This document shows positions 44,970 through 64,000 of a stretch of DNA of 64,000 nt, one piece after another. Position 1 is the first letter of the stretch. Every line of letters starts with the position of its first letter. The stretch is from Macrostomum lignano. Its lineage: Eukaryota. Position numbers and translations under genes: made by a program. Where the stretch lies: the NCBI GenBank assembly GCA_002269645.1, contig NIVC01000064.1, positions 558,001-622,000 on the forward strand, read 5' to 3'. The notes under the pieces are model-generated. The model had not been told where the DNA came from. It searched no databases and saw only the letters and a list, made by a program, of their open reading frames with translations.

Positions 44970-47903
44970 TTATCCAACAACAAACTGCTTATAATCTTTA
45001 ATCCGCTTTAACTGACACCGGATCCCCTTCACCAAATCCGTGGGCTGCAATACCAGACTGATCTCCTGGCCGTGAGCATTCAATCGCAGTGCCACCTCTT
45101 TCGGCTCCGGCCAGAGACTCAGCGGCCGGCCATTGACCTCGGTAATAGTCCAGGTGCAAAAATTGGCGTCGTCAACAGCGCCAGTGGTTCGATAAGCCAA
45201 GCCGTGAGCAGCGGCCAGGCCGTCCTGCTGCACGTGACAGATCTCGGCCTTGTGGCCGACAGTCTGCAGGCCCAGCGACTGGCCGTCCAAGCGTTGGACG
45301 CTGAAGGCTTTGCCGTACGGCAGGCGGCGCAGGCGGAGGGCGACGCGGTCGAAGGCGCCGTGCAGAATCCGGCGGAGCTGATCCAGCGACTCGATTGGGA
45401 AGCCATCGACTGAGATCACCTGTGGCGGGGAGGGGCGGAGGTGGGCTAAGGTTTCAGGGAGGGTTTTGAGGGTTCAGTGACGGGTTTAGTGAGGGTTCAG
45501 TGACGGGTTTAGTGAGGGTTCAGGGACGGATTTAATGAGGCTTCAGGGACGGATTTAATGAGGCTTCAGGGACGGATTTAATGAGGCTTCAGGGACGGAT
45601 TTAATGAGGGTTCAGGGACGGTTTCAATGAGGTTCAGGGACGGATTTAAAGAGGGTATTTAATAACGATATATTAGCTTCGGCAAGAAGCGAACCTCATC
45701 TCCCACATGCAGACAGGAGTGCAGCCTGGTGGCCTGCCTGGTCCAGCCGGCAATCCAGAAGCGGTCGCTGGCGCACTGCACAATGGCCACATTGTCCAGC
45801 AGGTCGGCACTCTTGCACATAACTGCAACCCCGCCAGGGTAAAGAATCTGGCGCTTCAATCGTTCAACAGCCGAGCTCAGCGGCGTCAGGCGGGGCCCGC
45901 CGGGCAGCGGGTTCACGTAGAACCGGCCATTGTCGGTCTCTTCAACCGCCACGTCGGTTTTCGGCTCGAAGAATCCGGCCAGAGGAATCGGCCGGAGCTC
46001 CCGACGGAACGTGGGCGGATCCGGGTTGGGCCGGTGCACCCCGGCGACCGAGCGGAACCGCTTGGTGCGCAGCGCGCCCAGGCCGTCCCAGTCTTCCAGT
46101 TCGCGGTACTTCTTCTCTAACAGGGCGTAGGCTGCGGGATCCAGACTGGCCAGCTCGCTGGGGCCCGCCAAGTTGGCGGCGGCGGCGGCCGGAGCGGCTT
46201 CGTTCAGCTCCTGGCGCAGCTGGGCCACCGCGGACCGGCCCTGAGCAGCTTCGATGCGCTGCTCAACTCGGCGCAGCTCGATCAGAATCTCGTTGGTTGC
46301 GCTGGAGGCGGCAGCAGCGTTGTTGCTGCCGTTGCCATTAGCAACGGAACAGCAGGCGGCCGCGTCCTCCTCGGTCTCGTCGTCGGTGGTTTCGTACACC
46401 TCTGCGGCGGCGCTGTCATCAAAGGTGCCGTAGATGTTGTCGGGCTTCTGCCGGCCGGAGTATTGCGCCAGGTTGCGGTTCAGGACGTCCGACCAGTCGG
46501 CTGGGGGCGTGAATGAGATGAATGATAGGGTAGGGAGTTGGGCGTAAATGAGGTGGGTGATAGGGTAGGGAGTTGGGCGTGAATGAGGTGAATGCTAGGG
46601 TAGGGAGTTGGGCGTGAATGAGGTGAATGATAGGGTAGGGAGTTGGGCGTGAATGAGGTGGGTGATAGGGTAGGGAGTTGGGCGTGAATGAGGTGGGTGA
46701 TAGGGTAGGGAGTTGGGCGTGAATGAGGTGGGTGATAGGGTAGGGAGTTGGGCGTGAATGAGGTGGGTGATAGGGTAGGGAGTTGGGCGTGAATGAGGTG
46801 GGTGATAGGGTAGGGAGTTGGGCGTGAATGAGGTGGGTGATAGGGTAGGGAGTTGGGCGTGAATGAGGTGGGTGATAGGGTAGGGAGTTGGGCGTGAATG
46901 AGGTGGGTGATAGGGTAGGGATTTGGGCGTGAATGAGATGAATGATAGGGTAGGGAGTTGGGCGTGAATGAGATGAATGATAGGGTAGGGATTTCGGCGT
47001 GAATGAGATGAATGATAGGGTAGGGATTTGGGCGTGAATGAGGGTGGGTGACAGGGTTGGTAAGTTGGGCGTGAATGAAGGTAGGTGATAGGGTATGGAG
47101 TTGGGCGTGAATGAGATGGGTGATCGGGTATGGAGTTGGGCGTGAATGAGGTGGGTGATCGGGTAGGGAGTTGAGCGTGAATGAGGTGGGTGATAGGGTA
47201 GGGAGTTGGGCGTGAATGAGGTGGGTGATAGGGTAGGGAGTTGGGCGTGGATGAGGTGGGTGATAGGGTATGGAGTTGGGCGTGAACGAGGTGGGTGATC
47301 GGGTATGGAGTTGGGCGTGAATGAGGTGGGTGATAGGGTACAGTTGGGCGTGAATGAGGTGGGTGATAGGGTATGGAGTTGGGCGTGAATGAGGTGGGTG
47401 ATCGGGTATGGAGTTGGGCGTGAATGAGGTGGGTGATAGGGTACAGTTGGGCGTGAATGAGGTGGGTGATAAATTTGGGATTGGTCGTGAATGAAGCTAG
47501 AATGAAACGGTGCAGTGAGAAGTGAACAAAAGTGAGCACAAGCAGCCAGAAGCTCACCAGCATCAGTCTCAGAGTCGGCAGTGAGTGTGAGCACCCGATC
47601 AGCCAGGGTGAGCATGAAGCTGGTCACATCGCTAGGAGATCGAATCACCTGGCGGCAGCCGCGCAAATCAAACGAATTGATTGGCGCCTCAGTCCTGGCC
47701 GAGTTCGAGTCCTCGTAGTATTCGAGCGAGGGCAGGCCGCCGAATATGAGGAACACGAACCAGCGCCTGGTGGGTCTGTGCAGCAGTGAGATGGACTTCA
47801 AGCCGGAACCACCGCCTCCGCTGCTAGCGCCGTTTGCGCCGCCGTTGTAAGCCGAGGTCTGCTTCTTCAGGTAGCCAGCCTTGATGGTGATTTGCTGGTT
47901 CAT
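44970..47903 (-). CDS. PH-domain + tandem PDZ-like adaptor protein, ~533 aa
   Basis: Exons 47903-47558, 46500-45695, 45419-44970 splice in frame (phase 1, 0). PH motifs KAGYLKKQ..RRWFVF..LEYYED..INSFDLRGC..LTADSE..W; Tyr motifs NIYG, EVYE; PDZ-like LHVGDEVISVDG and EICHVQQDGLAA..ITEVNG. Confidence 0.85.
45465..45655. repeat. ~23-bp intronic minisatellite
   Basis: GGCTTCAGGGACGGATTTAATGA-type units. Confidence 0.85.
46505..47470. repeat. 35-bp G-rich intronic minisatellite (~27 units)
   Basis: GGGCGTGAATGAGGTGGGTGATAGGGTAGGGAGTT. Confidence 0.95.
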
Positions 47904-48074
47904 TGCTGCTCTTTGCTTGCAGAAGAGCACTTCCCTCTGGAGGGTGGACCAACTGCTGCAGTTGCTAGGGTTGGAATGTATGGGCTACGGATTCCAGCTG
48001 TCAATTATATTCTGAAACCAATTGATTGGTGTTGGAAAAAGGTAAAATTTAAATTATAAAGGGTGTTCAAACAT

Positions 48075-48490
48075 AGCTTGAATGGGTATTCAGATACAGC
48101 TTGAATGGGTATTCAGATACAGCTTGAATGGGTATTCAGATACAGCTTGAATGGGTATTCAGATACAGCTTGAATGAGTAATCAGATACAGCTTGAATGG
48201 TTATTCAGATACAGCTTGAATGAGTAATCAGATACAGCTTGAAGGGGTATTCAGATACAGCTTGAATGGGTATTCAGATACAGCTTGAATGGGTATTCAG
48301 ATACAGCTTGAAGGGGTATTCAGATACAGCCTGAAGGGGTATCCAGATACAGCTTGAATGGGTATTCAGATACAGCTTGAATGGGTATTCAGATACAGCT
48401 TGAAGGGGTATTCAGATACAGCCTGAAGGGGTATTCAGATACAGCTTGAATGGGTATTCAGACACAGCTTGAATGAGTAATCAGATAAAA
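48075..48490. repeat. 23-bp minisatellite (~17 units)
   Basis: AGCTTGAATGGGTATTCAGATAC. Confidence 0.95.
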
Positions 48491-49249
48491 TTCAAATGGG
48501 TCAATAATTCTAAGAAACGCAAAATTCTAAGAAAAGTCTTGAAAAAATCACGCTAAACGAATTACCATATAAACAAGAAAGCATAATTACTAACGTAATA
48601 GTACCTTTTTATGATGCGAAGTCAGAAGATTTTAACGGCGAATTCAGAAAGGCGAAATCTTTTAAAAGTCTTGTCTGTTTTGATATTGGCCTACTACGAG
48701 CCGTAATACCGTTTAATTAATAGCTGGATATATATATAAGCTTGAAGCAGAGAAAGCCAAAAGCCAACAGGAAATCTCTTGTCCCCTGTATTCTATTGCA
48801 ATCTATTAAAGCTGGCTAAAACTAAAACTAAAACTAAAAGATAGAAGGAAGGCGCACAAGCGAAGCACTTATCAAGATAACGCAGGGCCTGCAGTGCTGC
48901 ATTAGTCAGTTCAGCTGAAGTCAGATGCACAGGCGGGTTAGCGACAAGAGAGTGAGTGAGAGACAGAGTGGTTCAAAATCTTTCCTACAGTGCAGATTCG
49001 GTGCTTATGCCATGCTATACTAGGTCATGTATATAATTTATGCATCAGCCAATGCTGATGCAAGGGTGGGGTCTGCACACCAGAATAAATATTACGTAGC
49101 AACAACCTCGCAAAATAGAGAATTTCACACACAGACTTTAAGGTAAGTGGGTAGATGCAAGCGAGGAAAGGGTTACAGATACGGGAGCGAGGCAGGGGTA
49201 CGGGTGGGTTGGGGTGATTGGAGAGAAATAGAGATCGAAAATCAGAGAC

Positions 49250-49910
49250 AGACAGACAGAAATAGAAGAGTTAGAGAAAGGTAGAGTGGGAGAGGGAGGG
49301 GAGGGGAGGAGGGAGAGAGGAGTGGGGAGGGAGAGAGAGAGAGAGGGGAGTGGGAGGGAGAGGGGGAGTGGGGAGGGAAAGAGAGGGGAGTGGTAGAAGG
49401 AGAGAGGGGAGTGGGAAGGAGAGAGAGGGGAGTTGAAGGGAGAGAGGGGAGTTGGAGGGTGAGAGGGGAGTGGGGAGCGAGAGAGAGGGGAGTGGGGAGC
49501 GAGAGAGAGGGGAGTGGGAGAGTGAGAAAGGGTGAGAGAGAGGGGAGTGGGAGAGTGAGAAAGGGTGAGAGAGAGGGGAGTAGGAGAGGGAAGTAGGGGG
49601 AGAGAGGGGAGTGGAAGAGAGAGGGGAGTGGGAGGGAGAGAAGGGGGAGTGGGAGGGTGAGAGAGGGGAGTTGGAGGGAGAGAGGGAGTGGGAGGGTAAG
49701 AGATGCGAGTGGGAGAGAGAGGGGAGTTGGAGGGAGAGAGGGAGTGGGAGGGTAAGAGATGCGAGTGGGAGAGAGAGGGGAGTTGGAGGGAGAGAGGGAG
49801 TGGGAGGGTAAGAGATGCGAGTGGGAGAGAGAGGGGAGTTGGAGGGAGAGAGGGAGTGGGAGGGTAAGAGATGCGAGTGGGAGAGAGAGAGGGGAGTTGG
49901 AGAGAGATAT
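49250..49910. repeat. GA-rich polypurine tract with internal duplications
   Basis: Direct inspection. Confidence 0.9.
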
Positions 49911-50709
49911 GCAGAGAGATTCAAGAAACAAACTTGCAGCCCAGACGCCGCTTTCAATTCCGAAATCGCATCTCAAGTGGGCAGTTTTCACAACAACTCA
50001 TTACAGGCCATATTTCAACAGGAGCTGCAGGGGTGGAGCTGTGTAATCAGCAATTTCCCTAGCAATGGCAGAGTTTCAGAAGCCAATTTGCACTCTTGAA
50101 GCAATAAAAGAAAGGCAAACACTCTAGACACTAAAATGAACCAGGCATAAGTAAAACTAAAAAAATAGAAGCAGAAAAACCACCATTTGAGCATAGTAAA
50201 ACCTTCAAAACAGTCCCGGTTTGATTTTAATAAAAATGTTTGAGTATATTTCTACCAACAAAGGTACACAACAACTTTTATGATCAATAAACTTCAGGAC
50301 GGATTTCTAATTGTTGAGATTCGCAAAAACACTTATAAAAGTATAAATAAAGCTGGTAAAAAACTCTGATAGACAAATACTTCAATCTAGTTAGGAAGCA
50401 GTCCATAAGTTTTTTATTAAAAAATTTCACTTTAAGCTGGGAGAAAAAATACGACAAATCAACAAGTGTCAGAAAATAATAGAAATTTTCAAGGAATTTG
50501 TAAAAACAGACAGCAAAAATTTGCTGAGAATTAACAATAACAGTTATTTGGAGCAGAATGGAATATAAAGTGCACACATCACTGCATCACGCCTAGCACC
50601 TAAAGTCACCTTGTTTTTTTACTTTGTAATTGGTTCAATTTGCGATTTTTTATTATTTTTACTTGGGGAAGAAAGGGGAGACTTAGAGACGAGATTAGGG
50701 GCATAGGAT

Positions 50710-51205: not shown

Positions 51206-52863
51206 TCAATCATCCCCTTCCTCTCCAGCCTCTTCCTCTTCATTGACTTCATCATTATTCTCTTCCTCGGCCTCAGCCTCTGCGTCATCAGCTGCTTGTG
51301 CATCGCCAACCTCCTCGGCCACCGTAGTCAGCGGAGCCTCTTCGAGTCGTTGCAGGCGAGCGCGAAGCTGTTCAACATCCTCTAGACGGAGCAGCTGCTC
51401 TACCAGGTCCGGCGTGAGCTTGAGCAGCGCCTCGGCTGACAGGGCTGGGAGTGACAGCGACTGCAGGCGGTCGCGAAGCTGCTCGACGCCTGGGTGAGAA
51501 TTGTTTAAATAGAGTGAACTGCTCAACTATCTGAAATAAGCTCCTGAGTGATCTGGAGTGAACTTCTAAGCGATCTAGAGTGAACTTCTAAGCGATCTAG
51601 AGTGAACTTCTAAGCGATCTAGAGTGAACTTCCAAGCGATCTAGAGTGAACTTCTAAGCGATCTATAGTGAACTTCTAAGCGATCTAGAGTAAACTTTTA
51701 AGCGATCTAGAGTGAACTTCTAAGCGATCTAGAGTGAACTTCTAAGCGATCTAGAATGAACTTCTAAGCGATCTAGAATGAACTTCTAAGCGATCTAGAA
51801 TGAACTTCTAAGCGATCTAGAATTAACTTCTAAGCAATCTAGAGTGAACTTCTAAGTGATCTGGAGTGAACTTCTAAGCGATCTAGAATGAACTTCTAAG
51901 CGATCTAGAGTGAACTTCTAACCGATCTATAATAAACTTCTAAGCGATCTAGAGTGAAATTCTAAGCAATCTAGAGTGAAATTCTAAGCGATCTAGAGTG
52001 AACTTCTAAGCGATCTAGAGTGAACTTCTAAGCAATCTAGAGTGAACTTCTAAGTGATCTGGAGTGAACTTCTAAGCGATCTAGAATGAACTTCTAAGCG
52101 ATCTAGAGTGAGGTTCTAACCGATCTAGAATGAACTTCTAAGCGATCTAGAGTGAACTTCTAAGCAATCTAGAGTGAAATTGTAAGCGATCTAGAGTGAA
52201 CTCTAAGCGATCTAGAGTGAACTTCTAACCGATCTAGAATGAACTTCTAAGCGATCTAGAGTGAAATTCTAAGCAATCTAGAGTGAAATTCTAAGCAATC
52301 TAGAGTGAAATTCTAAGCAATCTAGAGTGAAATTCTAAGCAATCTAGAGTGAAATTCTAAGCGATCTAGAATTAACTTCTAACCGATCTAGAATGAACTT
52401 TTAAGCGATCTAGAATGAACTTCTAAGCGATCTAGAATGAACTTCTAAGCGATCTAGAGTGAACTTCTAAGCGATCTAGAGTTAACTTTTAAGCGATCTA
52501 GAATGAACTTCTAAGCGATCTAGAATGAACTTCTAACCGATCTACAAAATGAACTTCTTAAACTACTTTCAAGATGCGCAGAATAAAGTTATCTATTCAG
52601 TATCCAGTGTATCTCAATTGCACTTCTACAACCATAGACAACCATATAAAAGTGCATTCTGTGTAACATCACCCCAGAAACTCACTAGCCATGTCAACCG
52701 GAGTCTGCGACGGAACTTTCTGACCGTCGTCCAAGGCGATCTCGAGGTCGCCGCCGATGTCGACGCTCTCCTCGACGACGGGCTCCGGCGTGGGCGGCTT
52801 TGGTGGAGGGAACACCAGCAGGTAGTCGCGCTGGGCGGCCTGGATTGCGGGGTCGATGATTGT
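51206..52863 (-). CDS. Last two exons of an unidentified gene (Pro-rich, then acidic C-terminus)
   Basis: Exons 52863-52686 (TIIDPAIQAAQRDYLLVFPPPKPPTPEP..) and 51489-51206 (..EEEEAGEEGDD*); donor A|GTGAGT and acceptor CCCAG| are phase 1 compatible; upstream exons not located. Confidence 0.7.
51545..52550. repeat. 22-bp intronic satellite (~45 units)
   Basis: CTAGAGTGAACTTCTAAGCGAT. Confidence 0.95.
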
Positions 52864-55800
52864 CTGGCTACACAATTTTACTACTGAATACGTACGGGTC
52901 ATGGCATTTAATTATTTACACTACTTTAATTAGACAAGGTGAGTTCTTCGACTCGACTCAGTCAGTGCGACCACAGAGAATTTTCAAAATAATAGCAGAG
53001 CAATGTTTTAAGGTTTATGTGCAATTACTGTTGCATAATAAATGGCGAAAAGTTTACTTAATTTCACTAGGATATTGGAAAGACCGACTGACGCCAAAAT
53101 GGGTGTCATTACTAAAAGGCTAAATCCGAAAGTTTGTGTTTCTCTGCTTTTCAAGCCGTGTTTAATATTTAAACTTTTGCGATTTGCGCGTTAATTCATT
53201 TTTTTCTGGCTCGTAACCTCCATACTTTTTCTACAAGGCTTTATCTGCCGAGAAGCTCGTAATACAATCTTGTAAGTAACTCTATATGTACTGCTCACAC
53301 ACATAACCTGGTGATGATAAAATAATTTCACCGTCACAATAACTGTCATTTTTTAGACGTTCAACAATAGACCCCGACAAAGGCCATTATGCGGCCGAAA
53401 TATTCGTGGTATCGAAAGCTTGACCTTCCCACTTCTTCAATTTTCCGAATGCGCGGTTATAACTGGAAATGTCTAACTGCTTGTTCATATCTGTCTATTT
53501 ATATATCTATCTATTAGCACCATTGACACGATCGAAAACATGATGGACAGCAGCACAAGAGCCTGCATTCCCAGAGTTATTCCTTGTACGGACAGGTATA
53601 CAAATATTGTATACGAACTTCGCACGGTTCTCTCAAACCATGCACAAGGGTTGGACACTTGCTGCGTACACTCGATCACGCTCTCTAAAGGAAATTTACT
53701 GTCCTTTAAAGCTGTCTGCCCTCACTGATGGTATTGATAAATCCAATGTGCGACGGGGCTCACCACAAATTTATAAATAAACTCACAATATATTTTAGTC
53801 CCTACTTGCAGTATGTTTTCATTTTTTGCTTTTCATTTTCGTGTTTTCGCGTATTTTTCGTCTTGGCTGTGTAACTTACGATTAGAGCTGCTACTGAGTG
53901 AGTCGTCTTTTTATTCCTCTTCCTACCCCGTGGACCAGTCAGCTTGTTTTTTTCTTCGGTTGCCCGAGAATTTCGAGGCACAACCGCACTTGGCACAACT
54001 CCGAAAGAGAATTTTCTGAGCAATATAATCAGCAACGTCAAAACACTCATACCGGAGCACATCAGCATCGATCGCGACCAAACCACAGACTTCCAGACGC
54101 TGATCTACGAGCGTACCAACAATGGGACTGGTCTTGGAACAACCGCCGTAACAACGATGTACCGCACCGTACTCGGGATAAGACTAGTCGTGAAAATGTT
54201 AAACCTCGCCGCAACCGCAACAAACCTCGCAGGATTAAGAATCGCAACGTCGAGACGTGATTCTCGACGAAATAAGGATGGCCCTTATGCTCCTGTTACT
54301 AAGGCTCTACCGACTAGTGCAGCCTAAAGTCTCACCCAGTCAAGAAACTCTTAAGGTCTGTCCATCACTTGGACAACTGGCGTATGTGCCGAAAAGTGTT
54401 CACAAGAAAGCCGAGCAGAAAGAAACGCTCATCCGAACAGCTATGCCGACCGATGGACCATTCAACGCGTTAAAGAAAACGCGGCGACCTGGAAAAGCAG
54501 AAAGCAAGATGCAATGGAGAGCCACTACGAGCTTTGCATGCTAAAAACTGCGTACGAGCTACAGTACAAGAGGCCACACCATCAACGTCGATCAAGTCAC
54601 CCTGAAGGCAGGCTGGCAGGTGGGCTACCGCTGGGCTTCGAAAGACCAGGGGAAGCGGTTCAACATTTCACTGCAGGACACGGGTGAGCTTTTCTGTGAA
54701 AGTACTTCTATTATTGCAGGGCCACCAAGCACACTTAAAAACACCGTTGTGACAGACTTGCAGTCTAATACCTAGCGGTTCAATGGGAACTGTACTCATG
54801 CTAGCAATCAGATAACACAACAGATGGGCCACTGCAGCCTTGCTGCAGACGCCAAAGTGTCCTTGGATTCAATGAGGAACCAAGAATACTTAGGCACAGA
54901 GAAATAACTGCGAGTGACAATTCACCATCTTCGTCCACCGCAGCGCTACCACTATGTCTAAAATCATGGTCAAGGTGTTAGATGGATGCAAAAACGATTT
55001 TAAACTTGTAATTATCGAAGCTACGCACATTAAATTTACACAAGCTTAGTTGAAAAGAGCAGCTTGATAGCTAGCAGTGGAGTGTAAAACCAACTCAGAG
55101 TGCTGTAAGTTGGCAATGAGGATGACTCTCTCTCTCTCTCAGTTGGCTTTAAACATATTTTCGCGTTCCTTTTTATACGAGCTACGAGCTACATTAAGTA
55201 TAAAAGTATAAAACAGGGTCAGACTGCCTGTCTTCAAGAGCTTGGCACGGAAGACAGACCCCCCCCCCTGTGCAGAGAGTTGCAGGATCGGGCTGTCTGT
55301 GGTCGGGAGCTTGATACGGGGATGATCTGCAATCAGACATCCCCACCTGCTACCGACAGCACCAAAGCAGATGCCAGCCAAGACAGTGTTCAATCACTGA
55401 TCTACATGCCACCCTCGATGCACATACGGTTCACCAAAGCCATGAAAACCAATGCACGTTCAGTCGACTCCAGTCTTGAGGAAGGTCTTGAAGACTGAGT
55501 AGTCTTCGGACCAAGCAAAAATCACGCTGCTAACTACTGTAATGATAACAACATAAAAATGTCCTAAGAAGGGTTGGAGATGAAGCCCCTAATCACAGCC
55601 AGCAACGGAGCACCCAGATACTCGTAGCCAAGTTGAAATATGTTCTAACGTGAGATATGAAAGAGCTAATCCCATGTCGAACGTTAAGGCTGTGATCCTG
55701 TTACCATGGGACCAGGCTCTTCTAAGGCAATTTGAACAGCTTATCGACAAGCAGCTGACCACAACTATCAACCACTGTGGCAAAAGACTTTCCAAAATCG

Positions 55801-57520
55801 AAAGTCTACACGATAGATCAAATTAGTTGCTGCCGATGCACCTGACAAATATCTGTGAGCAGCGGAAAACAGATACCGGTACAGCAAAGCAGATAAAATT
55901 TTGGGCTGCTGTGTCACTTCAAACAACGAAGACAAGAGGAAGAGATTACCCTAATCGATCTACTTCAAGCGCACGGATTCCCAACAATGATTGAACCCAA
56001 ATTCCTTTTATCCAAAGCAGACATTCAAAGGTATGAAATCTCTGTTTCTTCGCTACTCCATCTTTGAAGATGACTTTAATCAGGCCAGCAGCAACCTAAA
56101 TGTGCATTCTAAAAAAGCAGGGACATTCAATCCCTTCGATCGACATTTTTTTCTGTGGAATTTCGGCTTCCAAGACTGCGGTAGCCGAGACTGTGAGTTA
56201 TGCGAGACTGTGAAAAAGGCGGAGCAATCAAGGTCAGACTCCAGCCTCACTTGAGCGATATCAGGCTCGCTAAGGACAACCGTGTTAGCAGGAATTTTTG
56301 CTCTTCCAATCACTGCTTTGGTAATTTACGCATCATGGGCCTCTGGTACCTCAGCATCGAGAATGAGACCAGCAAAGAAGCCTATCGCAAACGCAGGATC
56401 GTGGAACAGAAAATCATCTCCCCGCTGAGCACGCAGTCATCATGCACAAGGGTTGCACACTGTATCTGCGTTCACTCGATTACACTTTTGAGAACATTTT
56501 CTGCCCCTGAAAAATTCCTGCCCTCACTGATGGCATTGATTAAGCTTTTCAGAGTGGGCGGCAATGCAGCAATACTGTGCGACGGGGCCCACCACAACTT
56601 AACACAAAATATCTAGTCCCCAACTACAGTATATTTCAGTAGATTTTCGCTTGATTTTGTTACACATGCAGAGAACCCCGACTAAGGCCAGCTCATTGCC
56701 GAAATATCGGTTCAGTACATTTATATTTTTCGTCTGTAACAGTCTTTGTGATTTTTCTCGTTTAAGTTAAGCTTAGAGCTGCTATACTGTTTGGGTGGTC
56801 TTATTTATCTATCTATCTACCATTTTTACTCAACGACGCTGTTCAGCGCACCCTTTTAAAGCTGGTATATAAATATTAAGGTTATGATAAAATAGCTTCA
56901 CTGCCAATATAATTGTTGTTTTTATACCCTTAAAATAAACCATAATGAGCATGAGCACTAGTATCTGCGGCTGACACTTCTACCTGTACGGCTCTACTAC
57001 TAATAAGACTACTACTACTACTTTTCTACTACTAGTCTACTACTGAACGGCAGTGCCCAGTTGCCTGTGACCAGGGGCTGGACGGACGGCGGTCTGTGAC
57101 CAGACACCGCCAACTGCGACTCGTGGCCTGACTGGCTACTCAATTTAATTACTGTTATCCAGTTAAATCTAATTATTTACACTCCTTTATGAAGTCAAAG
57201 TTCTTAGTGCTCTTTATCAATTTAATATCAGTGTTTTCGAAATAACTTTTTTGTTTTACTTTTCAAGCTGCTTAGTCATTAATTTCTTTGATTTAAACCT
57301 GTTTTTGTATAGCTCCTCACATCTATATTTTTTTGCAAGGCTTTAGTACCCCAACCAATCAGAGTGCTTCAATTTACTCTTTTTCATTTACTTTCTGTAC
57401 ACATTTTTACTCAAAAATGCTCAGAGCTGCCCTTCCAAGCTGGTATATCAATAATAAGGTAATGGTAAATAACTTCACTGCCAATATTTTTTGTTTTTAT
57501 ACCCTAAAAATAAACCCTGA

Positions 57521-57560
57521 TGGCCTGAAGAAGGCCCGGATCTGGCCAAAATATAGGTCG
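57521..57560 (+). ncRNA. Hammerhead motif, probably inactivated (GAAA>AAAA)
   Basis: CUGAAGA-a-GGCCcggaucuGGCC-AAAA-UAUA-GG. Confidence 0.5.
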
Positions 57561-58995
57561 ATTTAACAAATCCATAAGGGGATTCCTACTCTGTGTGCGT
57601 AGTTTTGTTTTGACATTCGTCTGTCTATCTATCTCTATCAATCTACCGGTAGGATATACCTACCAATAGCCGCACCTGGCATAACTCTAAAAACCAGCAA
57701 ACAAACCCAAAAAACGACCGACGCCAGCAAGATCGTAACCAGCCGAGTGGCCTTGGCAACAGATCCCGAAACGAATCATCTACTGGTTACGCTCGGGGCA
57801 AAAACTGACATGGGCCTAATCTTGAAAACGCCGCACTACAGACCATAGAACCCGTGATCACGATCATCTTGAGCCTCGCCGTAACACCCGTCATGATCCA
57901 CGTGATGACAACCGCCGTGGTTCCCGCAGCGACGGTTGCCGGTTTCCCCGAGGCCCTCGCGCTGACACCCGTCAAGAAGCTCACCAGCGGACTCCGATGT
58001 CGACAAAAGCCGCACGAGTTGCCCGCCTCGTTAAGCAACTCTTCCGAGCGGCGCAACACTTGGAGAACTGACGAGTTGTCCCGAGTGGGGTGCACCGCAA
58101 AACCGAACAGCTAAAAAAATTTATTCGGCCGGCCCTTCATACCGAAGCGACGCAACAATGCGTGCATGACAACGCTTTGACATGGGAGCTGAGCGCCCAG
58201 GATACAATGGAGAACCATTATGAGCTATGCCTTTTCTGCTTGTCAGCCGAAATCGAGGATGCCAGCAAGAAGGTCGACACGAGTCAGCTGCAAACGGGCT
58301 GACGTGTTAGCTTCCGCTGGGCATTGTAAGACCTCGGCAAACGATTCGCTTGCTATCGAGAGGTGCTACGCGCCCACTTCCGTCACATGTGGATCAAAAT
58401 GGTAATCCCATATTTAGATAATACTGGTGAGCCACTTTTCGTCTGTAAAAGCGTACTAAGAATTAACCCACCGGCCTCTCCTCTCCGTATGTTTAATGAG
58501 GAACCAAGCTTGCTCAACCTCGACGGTGACGGGAGGCTGGAAGGACTCCAAACCTCCGACCGACGCAATGCAATCGTCAGAGCTAATTGTGCAGTTGCAG
58601 GGTCGAGTCGCCAGTGCTCAGGGACTCGACACAGGGGTGGTATGCGATCAGGCATCCCCACCTGCAGGCAGCAATGGTGCTCTCAATGAACATCTATCTA
58701 CTGCTGAGCCGCACACGTCCGCCATCACTATCGACGACTCACAATCGCAGGGTAGAGTCACCAGCGCTGGACAGTATTGGCCTTGAGGACAGTGTTCACT
58801 TAACAGCAGCCTCCGACCAAGAGTCCATCCTGCAGGACCGACCCACCTGTGCCCAGGAACCCAAAGTAGGCGCAGACTGTCCTCAGTCACCACAGGCTAG
58901 CGCGCACCCCACCAAAGCTCGTATATAAACATTAAAGTTATGATAAAATAAGTTCACTGCCAAAATAATCGTTGTCTTTATACCCAAAAAATAAA

Positions 58996-59032
58996 TCCTG
59001 AAGAAGGCCAGGTTCTGGCCGAAAAATCGGTC
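58996..59032 (+). ncRNA. Minimal type I hammerhead ribozyme (helix III variant)
   Basis: uc-CUGAAGA-a-GGCCAG(guu)CUGGCC-GAAA-AAUC-GG. Confidence 0.6.
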
Positions 59033-59920
59033 GATTTAAATAAGTTCGATTTGACTTATCATTAAGAGAATTCGACTCTGAGTGCGTGGCTTTACTTTGG
59101 CATTCGGCTATATCTTCTCCCGCGACCAGTGATTGGTTTTCTCTCGGTGTGCCGTCTACTCACCCCGCTAAAAATTAACTCATGACCAAAATGAGCACAA
59201 GCGCTAATATTTACAGCTGATACTACTAGACGTTCGAGCCTACTATGACTACGATTACGACGTTGAAGACTACTACTATATTCTACTACTACTACTACCA
59301 CTACTGTTACTACTACTATTAATCTGCAATCGATCGGCAGTGCCCAGGGGCTGTGCAGGCGGCGGTCTGTGACCAGACGCCGACAACTGCGACTCGTGGC
59401 CTGACTGGCTACTTCAAATAACCTCTACTAGTACGACTCTACTATGACTACGACTAGGACTACTACTACTACTGCAACTAATACAGATGATCGGCAGTGC
59501 CCAGTCGCCTGTGTCCAGGGGCTGTGCAGGCGGCGGTCTGTGACCAGACGCCGCCAACTGCGACTCGTGGCCTGACTGGCTTCTCGTTCTCAATTACTGT
59601 TGGTGTATTTGCATTTAATTATTTACAATACTTTAAGCAATCCAAGTTCTTAGTGCTCTTTATCAATTTAAGTTGTGTTTTCGTAATAAATTTTGTCGTA
59701 CTAGTCAAGATGCTTAGTCATTCACTTTTTTCTAAATCAGTTTTTCTGTAGCTCCTCACATTTATTTTCGTTATTATCCAAGGCTTTAAAGCTGCAACCA
59801 ATCAGCGTGCTTCAATTCATCCTTTTTATTTTAAGTACACATTTTACTCAACGCTGCTAAGCGCACCCCTCCAAAGCTCGTATATAAATATTAAAGTTAT
59901 GATAAAATACCCCAAAAATA

Positions 59921-59958
59921 AACCCTGAAGAAGGCCAAATCTGGCCGAAATATCGGTC
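59921..59958 (+). ncRNA. Minimal type I hammerhead ribozyme (intact)
   Basis: aaCC-CUGAAGA-a-GGCCA(aauc)UGGCC-GAAA-UAUC/GGU; palindromic AUAU helix III as in dimeric Penelope-type hammerheads; predicted cleavage after 59954. Confidence 0.75.
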
Positions 59959-60711
59959 GATTTAAATACGTTCGATTTGACTAATCATTAAGAAAATCCG
60001 ACTCTGAGTGCGTGGCTTTACTTCAGGTGTCCCAAATTTATTTAGATTACTGCTGCTATTTGAAGAGTGAACTATAGCTACAGCTGTCAGCGCACCACAT
60101 GCTACCATAGACAGTACCGAAGACGCACAAGAGATTTAAGTATAACTACACCCTCTCTTGCGCATTACTAATAGATTTTTATGAATCAGATTAAACATCG
60201 GCCCGAGGGATTTATGAAAATAACTCCCGAAGAAGGCATGTTTTATCTCATATAAACCATAGATAAACTCCGGGATAATATTAGATAATACCCCGGAGTT
60301 ATAATATAATCCTGCAAATACAAAAAAGAAGTGTCTATGGCCAAAATGCCTACTAACTGAGAGGTGGGGTCGAGGGGGCGATGAGCCCCCCGCGGGGGTG
60401 TGGGGGCAGAGCCCCCACGTAAACAAACACTTATAATTAATTGTCTATGGTCTAAAGAAGCTACACGTCGGGAGATCAGGTCTGACTTTCATTTAAGTTT
60501 CGACAGTTCATTCATTTATTACAGAGTCTATCGAAAGGCTTTTCGATGCGTCAAATTCTTAATCCACTCGTCGACTATTCAAAAGATTTTATTGGCAACT
60601 TCGATCCAAACGTCCTACCGCTCGATTTCGTAAAGTCACGCGCTGGTGGAGATTTTCAAGATCATCAGTGGCTGGCGACTGAGATGAAAAGATACCTGGT
60701 ATGAAGAAGAA

Positions 60712-61944
60712 GTGGAGTTGGAAGATTTATACGAGATAGAGACGTTTGAGACACCACTGTTGGATGGTGGCGGTCGTTTTGCTATAGTCGACAGTGTTGC
60801 CGCGCTGAACGAGTCTGTCCGTCCAAAGGGCACAATCAATCGGAACAACTGGGCCCTGCGAATTTTCCAGGCATGGGTGAGCTCTCGTGTCAGTGAGATC
60901 GGCATGAAGCCCATCACCGAGTTCAGCTGTGAGGAAATCAATACGATTCTCGGTCGCTTCATCCACGAGGTGCGAAAGGTCAACGGCGAGCGTTATCCTA
61001 GAGGGTCATTAGTATCGATAGCCGCTGGACTTAATTCGGCCATTCGAGAGGTCCAGCCGACAGTAGATCTGTTCAAGTCAATGGAACTACGGCCATTCAG
61101 GGACTCGTTGGACGCTGCAATGAAACTGTCAACCGCCGCTGGTACTTCACTCAACAGTAAGCCAGCTGGGATTTTAAGTGTTTCTGACGAAGAAAAAATA
61201 TGGCAGTCTGGAGTCCTCGGCTTGGATAATCCTGATCAGCTGACCAAGACGCTCTTTTTTCTCAATGGACTCCACTTTGCTCTACGTGGAGGTGAAGAGC
61301 ATTCGAATCTGATGCTTTCCCAGATAACAATTGAAATACGCGACAACGAAGAGTGTCTTATTTACCGAGAAGCCTCATCAAAGACCTACCATGGCGGCTT
61401 GAATGACAAACGTCGCAAACAAGTGGAGCGGTTGTACGTCCCTTCTCACGCTAGATCCGTCTGTCATCTACAAGCGTTCAAGACTTATCTAAAGGTGCGT
61501 CCCCCAGACGCTACACGATTCTACCTCCAATCGGCCAAAAAGTGGGATAGCGGTGCGGCGTGGTATTGTAACAGACCGATTGGCAAAAACTACATGTGCA
61601 AAATGATGGCTACGATCACCGAGGATGCTGGCGTGCCCAAGCTGACAAACCACAGCCTGAGGGCAACATGTGCGACGCGTCTCTTTCAAGCTGGTGTGGA
61701 CGAGCAGCTTATAATGGAGCGTACTGGCCATCGCAGTGTCGACGGCGTACGTGCGTACAAGCGAACATCTACGAACCTAATCAAGTCGTCTAGTCTGGTG
61801 GTCGATGGCAGGCCGATTCAAGAAGCCACGACCTCATCTGGTGCATCTGGAAGTGGTGGCCACAGCTTCGTATTCAACAACTGTTCCGTTGTTCAAAACA
61901 TTTGTACGATGGGTACCTGTAGTCGACCTGATGGATTGCTATAA
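60712..61944 (+). CDS. Crypton-type tyrosine recombinase (DUF3504/KIAA1958-like)
   Basis: Open 410-aa frame with LRGGEE (R), NHSLRAT (HxxR), TGHRS (H), RAYKR (Y), and EVRK..GERYP motif; true start codon unclear. Confidence 0.85.
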   Translation: MELEDLYEIETFETPLLDGGGRFAIVDSVAALNESVRPKGTINRNNWALRIFQAWVSSRVSEIGMKPITEFSCEEINTILGRFIHEVRKVNGERYPRGSLVSIAAGLNSAIREVQPTVDLFKSMELRPFRDSLDAAMKLSTAAGTSLNSKPAGILSVSDEEKIWQSGVLGLDNPDQLTKTLFFLNGLHFALRGGEEHSNLMLSQITIEIRDNEECLIYREASSKTYHGGLNDKRRKQVERLYVPSHARSVCHLQAFKTYLKVRPPDATRFYLQSAKKWDSGAAWYCNRPIGKNYMCKMMATITEDAGVPKLTNHSLRATCATRLFQAGVDEQLIMERTGHRSVDGVRAYKRTSTNLIKSSSLVVDGRPIQEATTSSGASGSGGHSFVFNNCSVVQNICTMGTCSRPDGLL

Positions 61945-62229
61945 ATCGTTAGCTATACGTAACAAGCTGAAATAATATGCGAACATACTGGTGAAAACTG
62001 TTTTGACCATTGCAATGATCTGTTAAATTCAATTTTTTATCATATTGCATGTTTAGTGTCTATGGTCAGAATCAACTGACTGAAGAAATATACCGACAAA
62101 TAAAATCCCGGAAAAACTAAGATTATCAAGTCATGTAACATCCCGCGACTTGAAAAAATGTACCGGAAAGTTGCGTTATCTATGGTTTATGGCTCATTTT
62201 TGCCTACTGCAACGCCAGTGCAAAAACGA

Positions 62230-63302
62230 ATGGAGCCTAGCAAAGAAAACTTTAGATTTTACGCATGGACGCGGCAGTAGCTTGGAATCAGTGCTCAACA
62301 GTGCTTTGAAGAGTTGTCTTCCGTGTATGGCAGTGGAGCTCCATGCCGTGCAACTGTATTTAATTATTTCAAGGCAGCCACCGCTGATGCCAAGACCGGC
62401 CCCACTAAAGGAGCAGGCGACTGCCCGAGTGCCAGCGGTGCCGGGAGACCTCGATCAACTCGAACACCAGAGCTGATCAGCGATGCGCGTGTTCTGATTG
62501 AAGACGATCCAAAAGTGTCAGTACGGACCCTTGCTGACTGGCTGGAGGTTGACAAGTCAACGGTGCATCGAATTTTGAGAGAAGACCTGGAGCTGCGTTG
62601 CGTCACATCGGTATGGGTGCCCCATCACCTCACCGAGGCCAACAAACAGGCTAGGGTGGCATGTGCCAGAAACATCCGCAGCGTGTTTCAGAGTGAAGGA
62701 ATCAACAACATCATAGATAAGTTGGTCACCCAAGATGAGTCCTGGATCTGCCCTGCAAAATGAGCAACAGATGCTGGCTGTCGAAGGGGGAGCCCAGGCC
62801 CCAGGTGGTGAGAAGATGCATGGCAAACAAGAAGACTCTGCTTGTTGCAGCCTTCACCCCCAGCAAAAGGTTTTCATTTTAAACAACCAAACCAGGACAG
62901 TCAGTGGATGCGGAGTTCATTGTCAACTTCGTTCAGCGAACCGGGAATCTCTGGCGATCTTTAAGAAGTCAACCGATTCATCTTGATCAGGTGATCTGGC
63001 AGTGGGACAACGCCCGGCCTCACACAGCTGCAGCAACTCAACATTTCATGGAGAAACGAGGCATCCGATTGCTGCACCAGGCACCGTACAGTCCAGATTT
63101 TAATCTTTGTGACCGTTTTTTGTTTTCTTGGCTGAAGCGAGACTTCGAGCATCGCCAGTTTGGGAACCATGTTGAAGTGCAAGAGGCGACGTTGCAGTGG
63201 GCAAGGGGTTTGGAGATTGAGAGCCTGCAGCAGGAGTTGCATCAACTTTGGGATCACTGCGACGCTGTTATTCAATGCCAAGGAGATTACGTCACTGACT
63301 GA
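62230..63302 (+). pseudogene. Mariner transposase (2 stops, 1 frameshift)
   Basis: WVPHHL, TQDESWI, WDNARPH, YSPDFNLCD (34 residues between D2 and D3); stops at ~62278 and ~62880, frameshift at ~62750. Confidence 0.9.
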
Positions 63303-63399
63303 TGGTTTGTTTTGTTGCTGCAGTTGATATTGTTAAATTTAGCGAGAAGTCTAAATAAATTTGGGACACCCGAAGTTGGTGTTCGGCTTTGGAATTCGG

Positions 63400-63406
<7 letters not shown>

Positions 63407-63458
<52 letters not shown>

Positions 63459-63636
63459 CCTATCTATCTACCTATCCAGCTGCCTTAATCGTTTCCGGTG
63501 ATCTTGTGTGCGTGCTTTTAGCTTGATTGGCTGCGGCAAGCAAGCTCGAAAGAACTCGCTTCGCTCGCTCTTTCTCGATATCTACTATCTGTCTATCTGT
63601 CTATCTATCTATCTATCTATCTATCTACCTATCTAT

Positions 63637-63679
<43 letters not shown>

Positions 63680-63724
63680 CCTATCTATCTACCTATCTAT
63701 CTACCTATCTATCTACCTATCTAT

Positions 63725-63767
<43 letters not shown>

Positions 63768-63827
63768 CCTATCTATCTACCTATCTATCTATCTATCTAT
63801 CTATTTATCTATCTACCTATCTATCTG

Positions 63828-63859
<32 letters not shown>

Positions 63860-63868
63860 CCTATCTAT

Positions 63869-63907
<39 letters not shown>

Positions 63908-63948
63908 CCTATCTATCTATCTATCTATCTATCTACCTATCTATCTAC

Positions 63949-64000
<52 letters not shown>
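63407..64000. repeat. (TATC)n / GATA microsatellite with one ~110-bp interruption
   Basis: Direct inspection. Confidence 0.98.

What the first reader, a model, noticed from the sequence alone, without database searches (positions are those of the whole stretch)
53370..59960. Head-to-tail array of hammerhead ribozymes delimiting 0.8-3.3 kb units
Seen: five same-strand HHR-like motifs spaced ~3300, 840, 1480 and 925 nt apart within direct-repeat blocks; one is fully canonical. Established: minimal type I HHRs with a palindromic helix III occur in Penelope-like pLTRs and metazoan retrozymes, and cleave as dimers. Inference: a read-through transcript could be cut into monomers and circularised.
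Basis: partly seen in the sequence, partly recalled or inferred. Interest (0 to 1): 0.72.

Follow-up and report, generated by a model that had tools for sequence, protein, structure and literature searches.

The report
Decayed Penelope-type hammerhead retroelement cluster
The five motifs are real, but they are the known minimal hammerhead ribozymes of Penelope-like retrotransposons, sitting near the 3' ends of old protein-less copies piled into a (TATC)n microsatellite; only the last two still have an intact catalytic core, so this is an ordinary member of a known kind.

Summary
Five homologous, same-strand motifs lie 3304, 847, 1473 and 926 nt apart. One of them, H5 (59916-59963), fits the published minimal-hammerhead descriptor completely: it was the only hit in the window and no hit occurred in 300 shuffles.

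H4 has an intact core but a non-palindromic 15.2/16.2. H3 carries G12A plus an insertion. H1 and H2 carry U4C and have lost G8.

Rfam finds none of the five, but it also misses the same motif in a genuine Penelope-like element (PLE), so the Rfam result does not count against them.

A pattern scan of metagenome contigs fetched 37 loci with the same ribozyme type. Helices I and II covary across them. One locus is a perfect 4065-bp tandem of an RT + GIY-YIG PLE.

The window itself has no PLE reverse transcriptase (RT) or endonuclease (EN). The "units" are not a homogeneous tandem array. They are at least five 3'-anchored, 5'-variable insertions, each ending in promoter-like module, HHR, about 65-92 nt of tail, then (TATC)n. 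Shared blocks are only 74-78% identical, and a later transposon sits in the last tail.

At most the 926-nt H4-H5 unit could still be excised, and nothing here tests whether it is circularised.

Verdict: a new member of a known kind, of low-to-moderate interest.

The parts
52864..53512 (+). Element E0: very diverged copy of the shared R block + H1 + tail + TATC-like run. The 5' limit is uncertain.
   Evidence: Alignment to the R blocks of EB and ED; short matches at 52864-52929; TATC-like run at about 53488-53512.
53369..53410 (+). H1: degenerate min-HHR. The core reads CCGACAA instead of CUGANGA, and there is an extra U before the cleavage-site C. Predicted inactive.
   Evidence: family D5; CM local hit of 17.2 bits at 53380-53404; sequence.
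53513..56822 (+). Element EA: 3.3-kb unit with no recognisable protein. It has its own direct terminal repeats, 53638-53930 and 56438-56822 (73% identical). Only the right repeat keeps the HHR.
   Evidence: Alignment A2; no Pfam domain in its ORF pieces; no protein homologues; weak homology to the EC body.
56669..56717 (+). H2: min-HHR with an intact 5-bp helix I (GAACC/GGUUC) and GAAAUAUC, but core CCGACUA (U4C, G8U). Predicted inactive. The site equivalent to the cleavage site is after 56708.
   Evidence: CM 19.8 bits; sequence.
56823..57650 (+). Element EB. 56823-56947 is a promoter-like module that stops just before the HHR. It is joined to an R block (56948-57566) carrying H3, tail and TATC run.
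   Evidence: Self-BLAST map; alignment A1, row X_56815.
57514..57564 (+). H3: min-HHR with GAAA changed to AAAA (G12A) and an 8-nt insertion in the 5' strand of helix I. Predicted inactive. Equivalent site after 57555.
   Evidence: CM 24.8 bits.
57651..59120 (+). Element EC: 1.25-kb non-coding body distantly related to the EA body, then the promoter-like module (58902-58995), H4 and tail.
58989..59037 (+). H4: canonical core CUGAAGA-A-GGCCAG/CUGGCC-GAAA-AA-UC. Predicted cleavage after C59028. 15.2/16.2 is AA, not palindromic.
   Evidence: CM 36.9 bits; HHR fold -11.7 against MFE -15.4 kcal/mol.
59029..59954 (+). The only unit bounded by two intact cores (926 nt). Order: tail, degenerate TATC, 66 nt, CTA-rich microsatellite, two GC-rich blocks, AT-rich part with CCAATCAG (59798) and TATATAAA (59881), then the 5' part of H5.
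59916..59963 (+). H5: complete min-HHR, CUGAAGA-A-GGCCA/UGGCC-GAAA-UA-UC. Predicted cleavage after C59954.
   Evidence: Only strict-descriptor hit, 0 of 300 shuffles; CM 41.8 bits, E 2e-10; HHR fold -12.5 against MFE -12.9 kcal/mol.
59955..60019 (+). 3' tail of element ED, 94% identical to the tail after H4. It is interrupted at about 60020 by a later transposon.
   Evidence: family D8.
60020..63376 (.). Not part of the system. A 3.36-kb element with 27-bp terminal inverted repeats and a tyrosine-recombinase ORF, inserted into the tail.
   Evidence: Inverted match 60020-60046 / 63376-63350; Pfam DUF3504 + Phage_integrase.
63377..63476 (+). Continuation of the ED tail (ttcggct...) running into (TATC)n.
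63495..63535 (+). Extremely 5'-truncated copy of the element's 3' tail, embedded in the (TATC)n tract.
   Evidence: Alignment A7.
57355..57362 (+). CCAATCAG box in the EB R block. Its counterpart is at 59798-59805. TATA boxes are at 56866, 57444 (TATATCAA), 58922 and 59881.
   Evidence: All three TATATAAA in the 64-kb window fall at the equivalent position of these modules. Promoter function is inferred only.

Best explanation
The locus is a graveyard of non-autonomous Penelope-like retroelements. It holds at least five copies in the same orientation, plus one tail fragment. Each appears to have been inserted 3'-end first into a (TATC)n microsatellite, so each ends in the same 3' module: a CCAAT/TATA promoter-like stretch, a PLE-type minimal type I hammerhead, about 65-92 nt of tail, then (TATC)n. 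Upstream sequence differs because of 5' truncation, different cargo and later deletions.

Shown here: the motif is a real member of the metazoan PLE min-HHR class. The copies share only the 3' module. There is no RT or endonuclease in the window. Three of the five cores are mutated at invariant positions.

Inferred mechanism, following the published model for PLE pLTRs and retrozymes:
1. Transcription starts in one module and reads into the next.
2. Two hammerheads pair through their 4-nt AUAU mini-helix III.
3. They cut after UAUC (C59028 and C59954 here), giving a unit-length RNA with a 5'-OH and a 2',3'-cyclic phosphate.
4. That RNA may be ligated into a circle, or copied by a PLE RT-EN supplied in trans by an autonomous element elsewhere in the genome.

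In this locus only the 926-nt H4-H5 unit could still go through that cycle. The rest is fossil.
For: Motif class:
- H5 has the extra nucleotide between A9 and 10.1, G10.1-C11.1, palindromic U15.2-A16.2 and a short helix I. These are exactly the unsearched-for traits listed for PLE min-HHRs in PMC4209133.
- The strict descriptor gave 1 hit against 0 in 300 shuffles.

Relatives:
- 37 metagenome loci carry the same type.
- Positions the pattern left free behave as a hammerhead should. Helix I pair 6-46 is CG 14, AU 3, GC 2. The three positions before CUGA complement the fixed GGU. 15.2/16.2 is mostly UA, CG or AU.
- With hits not selected by the pattern, 8 of 11 pairs show double-sided changes, and 0 of 500 shuffles reach that.

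PLE link:
- L030 is a 4065-bp perfect tandem with RVT_1 (E 7e-11), GIY-YIG (28.1 bits against a cut-off of 22.6) and the ADKG motif. The same HHR lies between its ORFs.
- Inverted HHR pairs occur in L010, L013 and L033, as described for PLEs.

Architecture:
- Self-BLAST map and alignments A1, A2, A6 and A7.
- Every HHR is followed 65-92 nt later by a TATC-type run.
- A 40-nt tail-only copy sits inside (TATC)n.
- Several relatives have (TA)n at 46-142 nt, four of them about 96-101 nt, after their HHR. This matches the microsatellite bias and 3'-proximal HHR of PLEs (PMC8557442).
- The HHR block is the best-conserved block in all ten pairwise comparisons apart from the H4-H5 tail, even where the flanks are unalignable.

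Non-autonomy: no RVT_1 or GIY-YIG among 105 ORFs of at least 100 aa. tblastn with the L030 proteins gave nothing below E 0.5.
Against: - No cleavage, transcript or circle data exist.
- The metagenome relatives were fished with a pattern derived from the window's own motif. The high CM scores of H4 and H5, and the invariant GGCC/GGU columns, are therefore partly by construction.
- Within the window there is no clean compensatory change. There are only 5 copies, and 24 of 500 shuffles reach the observed value.
- Helix I of H4 and H5 has only 3 contiguous pairs.
- The H4 MFE fold sequesters CUGA and is 3.7 kcal/mol better than the HHR fold.
- No autonomous partner with a matching 3' module was found, and the host organism is unidentified.
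- The order and independence of the insertions are inferred from structure, not from target-site duplications, which the microsatellite hides.
- Promoter function of the CCAAT/TATA boxes is untested.
Confidence: 0.78

Rival explanations
1. Active non-LTR retrozyme array. The locus is transcribed as one read-through RNA, cut at each hammerhead into monomers, and the monomers are circularised and re-inserted by rolling-circle reverse transcription.
For: - All motifs are on the same strand.
- H4 and H5 have intact cores 926 nt apart. This lies inside the 51-972 bp range reported for animal retrozyme consensus sequences (preprint 10.64898/2026.07.22.740005).
- The unit has no coding capacity.
- The tail after H4 and H5 is 94% identical (family D8).
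- That preprint argues that retrozymes derive from PLE pLTRs.
Against: - The units are heterogeneous, and shared blocks are only 74-78% identical.
- Three of five cores are mutated at invariant positions.
- The hammerhead is the minimal PLE type, not the canonical type I with loop1-loop2 contacts that defines animal retrozymes (PMC7229834).
- Each unit ends at a microsatellite, as after 3'-anchored insertion.
- A transposon has since landed in the last tail.
Confidence: 0.12
2. Decayed autonomous Penelope-like elements. The 2.5-kb body of EA and the 1.25-kb body of EC are the remains of an RT-EN ORF between two pLTRs.
For: - EA has pLTR-like direct repeats flanking about 2.5 kb, the size of a PLE ORF.
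- The + strand is A-rich.
- EA and EC share short stretches that align better as protein than as DNA.
Against: - No Pfam RT or GIY-YIG hit, even at E <= 1, in the ORF pieces.
- tblastn with a complete PLE RT-EN gave only E 6-9 non-collinear scraps.
- phmmer of a 110-aa piece against 1.84 billion representatives gave nothing.
Confidence: 0.07
3. Chance resemblance. A repeated AT-rich sequence happens to contain CUGANGA and GAAA boxes and has no ribozyme ancestry.
For: - Rfam finds no hammerhead at E <= 10.
- The bare core pattern is not enriched in the window.
- There is no compensatory change among the five copies.
Against: - The strict descriptor gave 0 hits in 300 shuffles.
- The scan returned 37 loci, against my own rough estimate of about 0.5 expected by chance, a figure that rests on an assumed collection size.
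- Relatives covary, and the same motif sits in an RT + GIY-YIG PLE.
- Rfam is blind to this class in the control.
Confidence: 0.03

Closest known systems
Minimal hammerhead ribozymes (min-HHR) of metazoan Penelope-like element pLTRs (Cervera & de la Pena 2014, PMC4209133)
   Same: Type I topology. CUGANGA/GAAA core. An unpaired nucleotide between A9 and 10.1. G10.1-C11.1. No real helix III, only palindromic 15.2/16.2 (UA). Short helix I without loop 1. Same-strand copies a few kb apart. Many degenerate copies. Not detected by Rfam.
   Different: No RT-EN ORF between the copies here. Helix II is 4-6 bp rather than the 6-8 bp emphasised for Schistosoma and Drosophila. Helix I of H4 and H5 is only 3 bp, followed by an internal loop.
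Canonical EN+ Penelope-like elements (Penelope/Poseidon, Neptune, Nematis), for example locus L030 fetched here
   Same: Partial tandems forming pseudo-LTRs. 5' truncation. HHR near the 3' end. Insertion next to microsatellites. A CCAATCAG and TATA-like box upstream of the HHR in both L030 and the window.
   Different: The window elements encode no protein. The microsatellite is (TATC)n rather than the (TA)n described for some PLE clades and seen in the relatives.
Animal non-LTR retrozymes (Cervera & de la Pena 2020, PMC7229834; Li et al. 2026 preprint)
   Same: Non-coding, same-strand units bounded by type I hammerheads that are thought to act as dimers. A proposed origin from PLE pLTRs. The 926-nt unit lies within the reported size range.
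   Different: Retrozymes are homogeneous short tandem repeats (mostly 150-450 bp) carrying canonical HHRs with loop-loop tertiary contacts and efficient cleavage. Here the units are heterogeneous and old, and they carry the minimal HHR.
Non-autonomous PLE derivatives such as MRC1 and other Chlamys-derived elements of Chlamydomonas (Craig et al. 2021, PMC8557442)
   Same: Protein-less elements that form pLTRs and head-to-tail insertions and share only their 3' ends with one another or with autonomous partners.
   Different: Most Chlamys elements lack HHRs. No autonomous partner has been identified here.

Membership tests
Metazoan PLE min-HHR (PMC4209133) | Conserved catalytic boxes C3-U4-G5-A6-N7-G8-A9 and G12-A13-A14, with cleavage after U16.1-H17 | tested here: met
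   Met by H4 (58998-59028) and H5 (59925-59954). Not met by H1 (CCGACAA), H2 (CCGACUA) or H3 (AAAA in place of GAAA).
Metazoan PLE min-HHR (PMC4209133) | One unpaired nucleotide between A9 and G10.1, and a G10.1-C11.1 pair | tested here: met
   All five copies read A then GGC(C)...(G)GCC before GAAA.
Metazoan PLE min-HHR (PMC4209133) | No stable helix III; positions 15.2/16.2 palindromic, so that two copies can form a dimer | tested here: met
   UA in H5, H2 and H3, and in H1 with an extra U. AA in H4, so not met there. Relatives show UA, CG, AU and UG, with a minority CA.
Metazoan PLE min-HHR (PMC4209133) | Helix I of about 4-5 bp that covaries | tested here: inconclusive
   H2 has 5 bp. H4 and H5 have 3 bp, a 2x2 internal loop, then 4 A-U pairs. 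Covariation is clear in relatives but not among the five window copies.
Metazoan PLE min-HHR (PMC4209133) | Self-cleavage, as a dimer | not testable with these tools
   Only folding energies are available: H5 HHR fold -12.5 against MFE -12.9; H4 -11.7 against -15.4 kcal/mol.
Penelope-like element (autonomous, EN+) | ORF with a TERT-like RT (DKG motif) and a GIY-YIG endonuclease | tested here: not met
   No RVT_1 or GIY-YIG among 105 ORFs of at least 100 aa. No tblastn match to the L030 RT-EN. The control L030 has both.
Penelope-like element (structural hallmarks, PMC8557442) | Partial tandems / pseudo-LTRs, 5' truncation, HHR near the 3' end, microsatellite-associated insertion | tested here: met
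   The 30-40-bp 'tail' signature was not resolved.
Animal non-LTR retrozyme (PMC7229834) | Homogeneous head-to-tail short repeats | tested here: not met
   Units of 3304, 847, 1473 and 926 nt have different bodies, and shared blocks are 74-78% identical.
Animal non-LTR retrozyme (PMC7229834) | Canonical type I HHR with loop 1-loop 2 tertiary contacts | tested here: not met
   No loop 1. Helix I is short and open. No Rfam Hammerhead hit.
Animal non-LTR retrozyme (Li et al. 2026 criterion for 'active') | [quoted passage not shown] | tested here: inconclusive
   Only one unit (59029-59954) is bounded by two intact cores (H4, H5), and the neighbouring unit on the H3 side has a G12A core.
Animal non-LTR retrozyme | Expression as unit-length linear and circular RNA | not testable with these tools
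   No transcript data are available.
Rfam Hammerhead_1 / Hammerhead clan | Score at or above the gathering threshold | tested here: not met
   No hit even at E <= 10. The same holds for the min-HHR of the genuine PLE L030, so the test lacks power for this class.

The most novel reading that the evidence does not exclude
The roughly 0.9-kb R-type unit could be a still-competent intermediate form between PLE pLTRs and retrozymes. It consists of tail, microsatellite, GC-rich stem-loop block, CCAAT/TATA promoter and min-HHR. On this reading it is a self-promoting, protein-less element whose RNA polymerase II transcripts start a few tens of nucleotides upstream of the hammerhead. The ribozyme would then remove the capped leader and, at the next copy, define a 926-nt RNA that circularises and is mobilised in trans into (TATC)n tracts. 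It could also carry kilobase-sized non-coding cargo, as in EA and EC.
Probability: 0.12. Interest if true: 0.45.

Novelty: new member of a known kind. Interest (0 to 1): 0.25.

Why it matters
The locus adds one more instance of PLE-type minimal hammerheads, this time on protein-less derivatives.

It shows in a single locus how successive 3'-anchored insertions into a microsatellite can mimic a ribozyme-delimited tandem array.

It gives a practical warning: Rfam's hammerhead models miss this whole class, while a small custom covariance model recovers it cleanly.

If the young 926-nt unit proved active, it would be a useful intermediate for the current proposal that animal retrozymes descend from PLE pLTRs. 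It would not open a new question.

Tried and rejected
- Rfam at gathering threshold and at E <= 10 found no hammerhead. The control shows the models cannot see min-HHRs, so this negative was set aside.
- I first favoured an alternative cleavage register, GGUC|GAUUU, which gives a 6-bp helix I in H4.
- Pfam on unit ORF pieces and on all 105 ORFs of at least 100 aa found no PLE protein.
- tblastn of the L030 RT-EN against the window, and of unit ORF pieces against the fetched loci, found nothing.
- A word-index protein search with ORF 56200-56613, and a full phmmer search with 54355-54684 against 1.84 billion representatives, found no homologue. The cargo remains unassigned.
- Identifying the host through the tyrosine-recombinase ORF failed.
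- A tRNA scan of 52-64 kb found nothing, so there is no sign of a tRNA-derived SINE.
- Folding the conserved GC-rich block predicts stable stems, but no covariation can be seen with three copies.
- Dimer cofolding: the MFE dimers are dominated by helix II strand swaps and a GGCCGA/UCGGUC hairpin, not by the 4-bp AUAU helix III. Thermodynamic prediction therefore neither supports nor excludes the active dimer.

Full report
**Observation**

The repeat finder reports one family of five 43-nt copies on the + strand, at 53373, 56677, 57524, 58997 and 59923.

Only two copies have the canonical hammerhead boxes CUGAAGA...GAAA: 58998-59024 and 59925-59950. That loose pattern is not enriched in the window as a whole (10 found, 6.3 expected).

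I then wrote a full descriptor of the minimal hammerhead. It requires the core, an optional extra nucleotide, helix II of at least 4 bp, palindromic 15.2/16.2, UH, and helix I of at least 3 bp. It matches once in the window, at 59925-59954, and never in 300 dinucleotide-preserving shuffles of the 64 kb on both strands.

I call the five copies H1 to H5:
- **H5** is complete.
- **H4** has AA instead of a palindromic 15.2/16.2.
- **H3** reads AAAA for GAAA (G12A) and has an 8-nt insertion in the 5' strand of helix I.
- **H1 and H2** read CCGACAA and CCGACUA for CUGANGA (U4C, with G8 lost).

By the classical mutational analyses of the hammerhead core (established knowledge), H1-H3 should be inactive.

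**Rfam**

Rfam 15 finds no hammerhead, at gathering thresholds or at E <= 10, even on a 171-nt stretch around H5. This is not evidence against the motif. The same search misses the equivalent motif in a bona fide Penelope-like element fetched later.

**What kind of hammerhead**

Cervera & de la Pena (PMC4209133) defined the 'min-HHR' of metazoan Penelope-like elements (PLEs). They listed traits that emerged without being part of their search:
- a conserved G10.1-C11.1 pair;
- palindromic 15.2-16.2 in place of a helix III;
- a short helix I;
- presumed action as a dimer, with low activity in vitro.

H5 reads AAACC-CUGAAGA-A-GGCCA(AAUC)UGGCC-GAAA-UA-UC|GGU and has all of these traits.

I first considered a second register, with cleavage after GGUC. 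I dropped it once relatives were available.

**Relatives**

One scan of the metagenome contigs used the pattern CTGANGANGGCC N3-9 GGCCGAAANNTHGGT. It returned 37 loci. By my own rough estimate, which rests on an assumed collection size, about 0.5 hits would be expected by chance.

Positions the pattern left free behave as a hammerhead should:
- The three bases before CUGA complement the fixed GGU.
- The next helix I pair is CG in 14 sequences, AU in 3 and GC in 2.
- 15.2/16.2 is UA, CG, AU or UG in most cases.

I built a covariance model from 20 of these sequences, with no window sequence included. It finds 50 sites in the loci, including ones that do not fit the pattern. In that larger set, 8 of 11 pairs have double-sided changes, among them changes in the GGCC helix II, and 0 of 500 shuffles reach that. 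That alignment is fitted to the model, which inflates such counts somewhat.

Several loci show inverted hammerhead pairs a few hundred nt apart (L010, L013, L033), as described for PLEs.

Locus L030 is a perfect tandem of 4065-bp units. [quoted passage not shown] The hammerhead lies about 330 nt after that ORF. So this ribozyme type does sit in the pseudo-LTR region of a canonical EN+ PLE.

Run on the window with filters off, the model ranks exactly the five motifs first: 41.8, 36.9, 24.8, 19.8 and 17.2 bits. The next hit scores 12.9 bits.

One caveat applies throughout. The fishing pattern came from the window's own motif, so the scores of H4 and H5 are partly by construction.

**What the units are**

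The window is a transposon-rich stretch of a eukaryote. It contains Copia gag and RT, an RNase H, Tc1/mariner-type DDE pieces and a tyrosine recombinase. I could not identify the organism.

There is no PLE reverse transcriptase or GIY-YIG endonuclease anywhere in the 64 kb. The ORF pieces inside the units have no Pfam domain and no homologue in either large protein library.

The self-comparison and alignments show that the units are not repeats of one monomer. What they share is a 3' module:
- an AT-rich stretch with CCAATCAG and TATATAAA;
- the hammerhead;
- a 65-92-nt tail ending ...GTGCGTGGCTTTACTTTGGCATTCGGCT;
- a TATC-type microsatellite.

Upstream of the module the units differ. I call the elements E0, EA, EB, EC and ED in genomic order:
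- **E0 (about 52864-53512):** a very diverged copy of the roughly 590-bp 'R' block.
- **EA (53513-56822):** a 3.3-kb element with its own 73%-identical direct repeats, of which only the right one keeps the hammerhead.
- **EB (56823-57650):** a module fragment without a hammerhead, joined to an R block.
- **EC (57651-59120):** a 1.25-kb body distantly related to that of EA, plus only the last 95 nt of the module upstream of H4.
- **ED (59121-60019, continuing at 63377):** an R block with a duplicated GC-rich segment.

The ED tail is interrupted by a 3.36-kb element with 27-bp terminal inverted repeats and a tyrosine-recombinase ORF. Beyond it the tail resumes and runs into more than 600 bp of (TATC)n, and a further 40-nt tail-only copy is embedded in that tract.

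Shared blocks are 74-78% identical. The exception is the tails after H4 and H5, which are 94% identical.

A constant 3' end next to a microsatellite, with a variable 5' extent and all copies in the same orientation, is the pattern left by repeated target-primed insertions. It matches the published hallmarks of PLEs: partial tandems forming pseudo-LTRs, 5' truncation, the HHR near the 3' end, a microsatellite bias, and non-autonomous derivatives that share 3' ends (PMC8557442). In one group of metagenome relatives the hammerhead is likewise followed by a (TA)n run, at about 96-101 nt in four loci and 46-142 nt overall.

In all ten pairwise comparisons apart from the H4-H5 tail, the hammerhead block is the best-conserved block. 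This holds even between H2 and H4/H5, whose flanks are no better than random. That is what one expects if the ribozyme is the conserved functional module of otherwise divergent families.

**Mechanism**

Shown: the class of the motif, the architecture, the absence of coding capacity, and the state of each core.

Inferred from the literature model (PMC4209133, PMC7229834, PMC11167929):
1. Transcription starts in one module. The CCAAT and TATA boxes are conserved in four modules. All three TATATAAA of the window lie there, and a CCAATCAG plus a TATA-like box also precede the hammerhead in L030.
2. Transcription reads into the next module.
3. Two hammerheads pair through AUAU and cleave after UAUC.
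4. The unit-length RNA, carrying a 5'-OH and a 2',3'-cyclic phosphate, is ligated or is copied by a PLE RT-EN supplied in trans.

Here only H4 and H5 could act, releasing 59029-59954 (926 nt).

The energetics are lukewarm. The H5 hammerhead fold (-12.5 kcal/mol) is about equal to its MFE (-12.9). In H4 an alternative fold pairs CUGA with UCGG and is 3.7 kcal/mol better. An H4/H5 heterodimer would have 3 of the 4 helix III pairs. Low intrinsic activity is what was reported for this class.

**Comparison and novelty**

The motif is a member of the PLE min-HHR class. The elements work like non-autonomous PLE derivatives.

They are not typical animal retrozymes. Those are homogeneous short tandem repeats with canonical, tertiary-stabilised type I hammerheads (PMC7229834). 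A 2026 preprint nevertheless argues that retrozymes descend from PLE pLTRs and reports consensus lengths of up to 972 bp.

Nothing here lies outside known kinds. The modest points of interest are:
- the (TATC)n association;
- the kilobase-sized non-coding bodies;
- the conserved promoter-like boxes just upstream of the ribozyme;
- the demonstration that Rfam cannot see this class.

Interest 0.25; new member of a known kind.

Noticed in passing
window 60020-63376: A 3.36-kb element bounded by 27-bp terminal inverted repeats (ACTTCRGGTGTCCCAAATTTATTTAGA). It encodes a 410-aa tyrosine recombinase with DUF3504, QRICH1 and Phage_integrase domains, which is Crypton-like, although Cryptons usually lack TIRs. 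It is inserted in the tail of the last hammerhead element. The best database relative is only 67% identical.
   Followed up: partly
window 51900-52550: Satellite of 22-bp units (TCTAAGCGATCTAGAGTGAACT), at least 19 copies, immediately upstream of the cluster.
   Followed up: no
window 63401-64000: (TATC)n tract of more than 600 bp, running off the window end. It is interrupted at 63477-63585 by a 40-nt copy of the element's 3' tail plus about 50 nt of unassigned sequence.
   Followed up: partly
window 57044-57141, 59317-59414, 59488-59585: A 98-nt GC-rich block, conserved at 91% between EB and ED. This is well above the 74% of the surrounding R block. Stable stem-loops are predicted (for example GGCGGUCUG...CAGACGCCGCC). 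It could be a protein-binding RNA element, but three copies give no covariation.
   Followed up: partly
window 57355, 59798 (CCAATCAG); 56866, 58922, 59881 (TATATAAA); L030/L006 upstream of the HHR: An exact NF-Y-type CCAATCAG box and a TATA box precede the hammerhead, both in the window modules and in the complete PLE of L030. All three TATATAAA octamers of the 64-kb window are at this position. This suggests the pLTR promoter fires just upstream of the ribozyme.
   Followed up: partly
window 53375-53381 and 56679-56685: H1 and H2 share the same core change (CCGAC, U4 to C), although their flanks are unalignable. Either a family spread with an already dead ribozyme, or this is an untested core variant.
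   Followed up: no
window 54457-54661 vs 58150-58347: The EA and EC bodies share short stretches that align at 47-52% as protein (motif HYELC) but not as DNA. No homologue exists in 1.84 billion representative proteins. The origin of the cargo is unknown.
   Followed up: partly
L030 (contig WLWD01002292.1) 4178-12687: Perfect 4065-bp tandem of an intact EN+ Penelope-like element: a 544-aa ORF1 of unknown function, then an 829-aa RT-GIY-YIG ORF, with three identical min-HHRs. It looks recently active. Four further loci come from the neighbouring contig WLWD01002310.1.
   Followed up: partly
L030 4300-4800; window 59850-60020: Rfam 15 hammerhead models give no hit, even at E <= 10, on min-HHRs of a genuine PLE. 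Genome scans that rely on Rfam will miss this class.
   Followed up: yes
window 46422-47984 (- strand) and 46000-50000: A PH-domain exon runs into a long translated low-complexity repeat (PTSFTPNS.../HPPHSRPTPYPITHLIHAQL...) in a region of extreme GC skew (0.43-0.52).
   Followed up: no
window 18403-23731: Copia-type LTR retrotransposon ORFs (gag, zinc knuckle, RVT_2) on the + strand, apparently broken into several frames.
   Followed up: no
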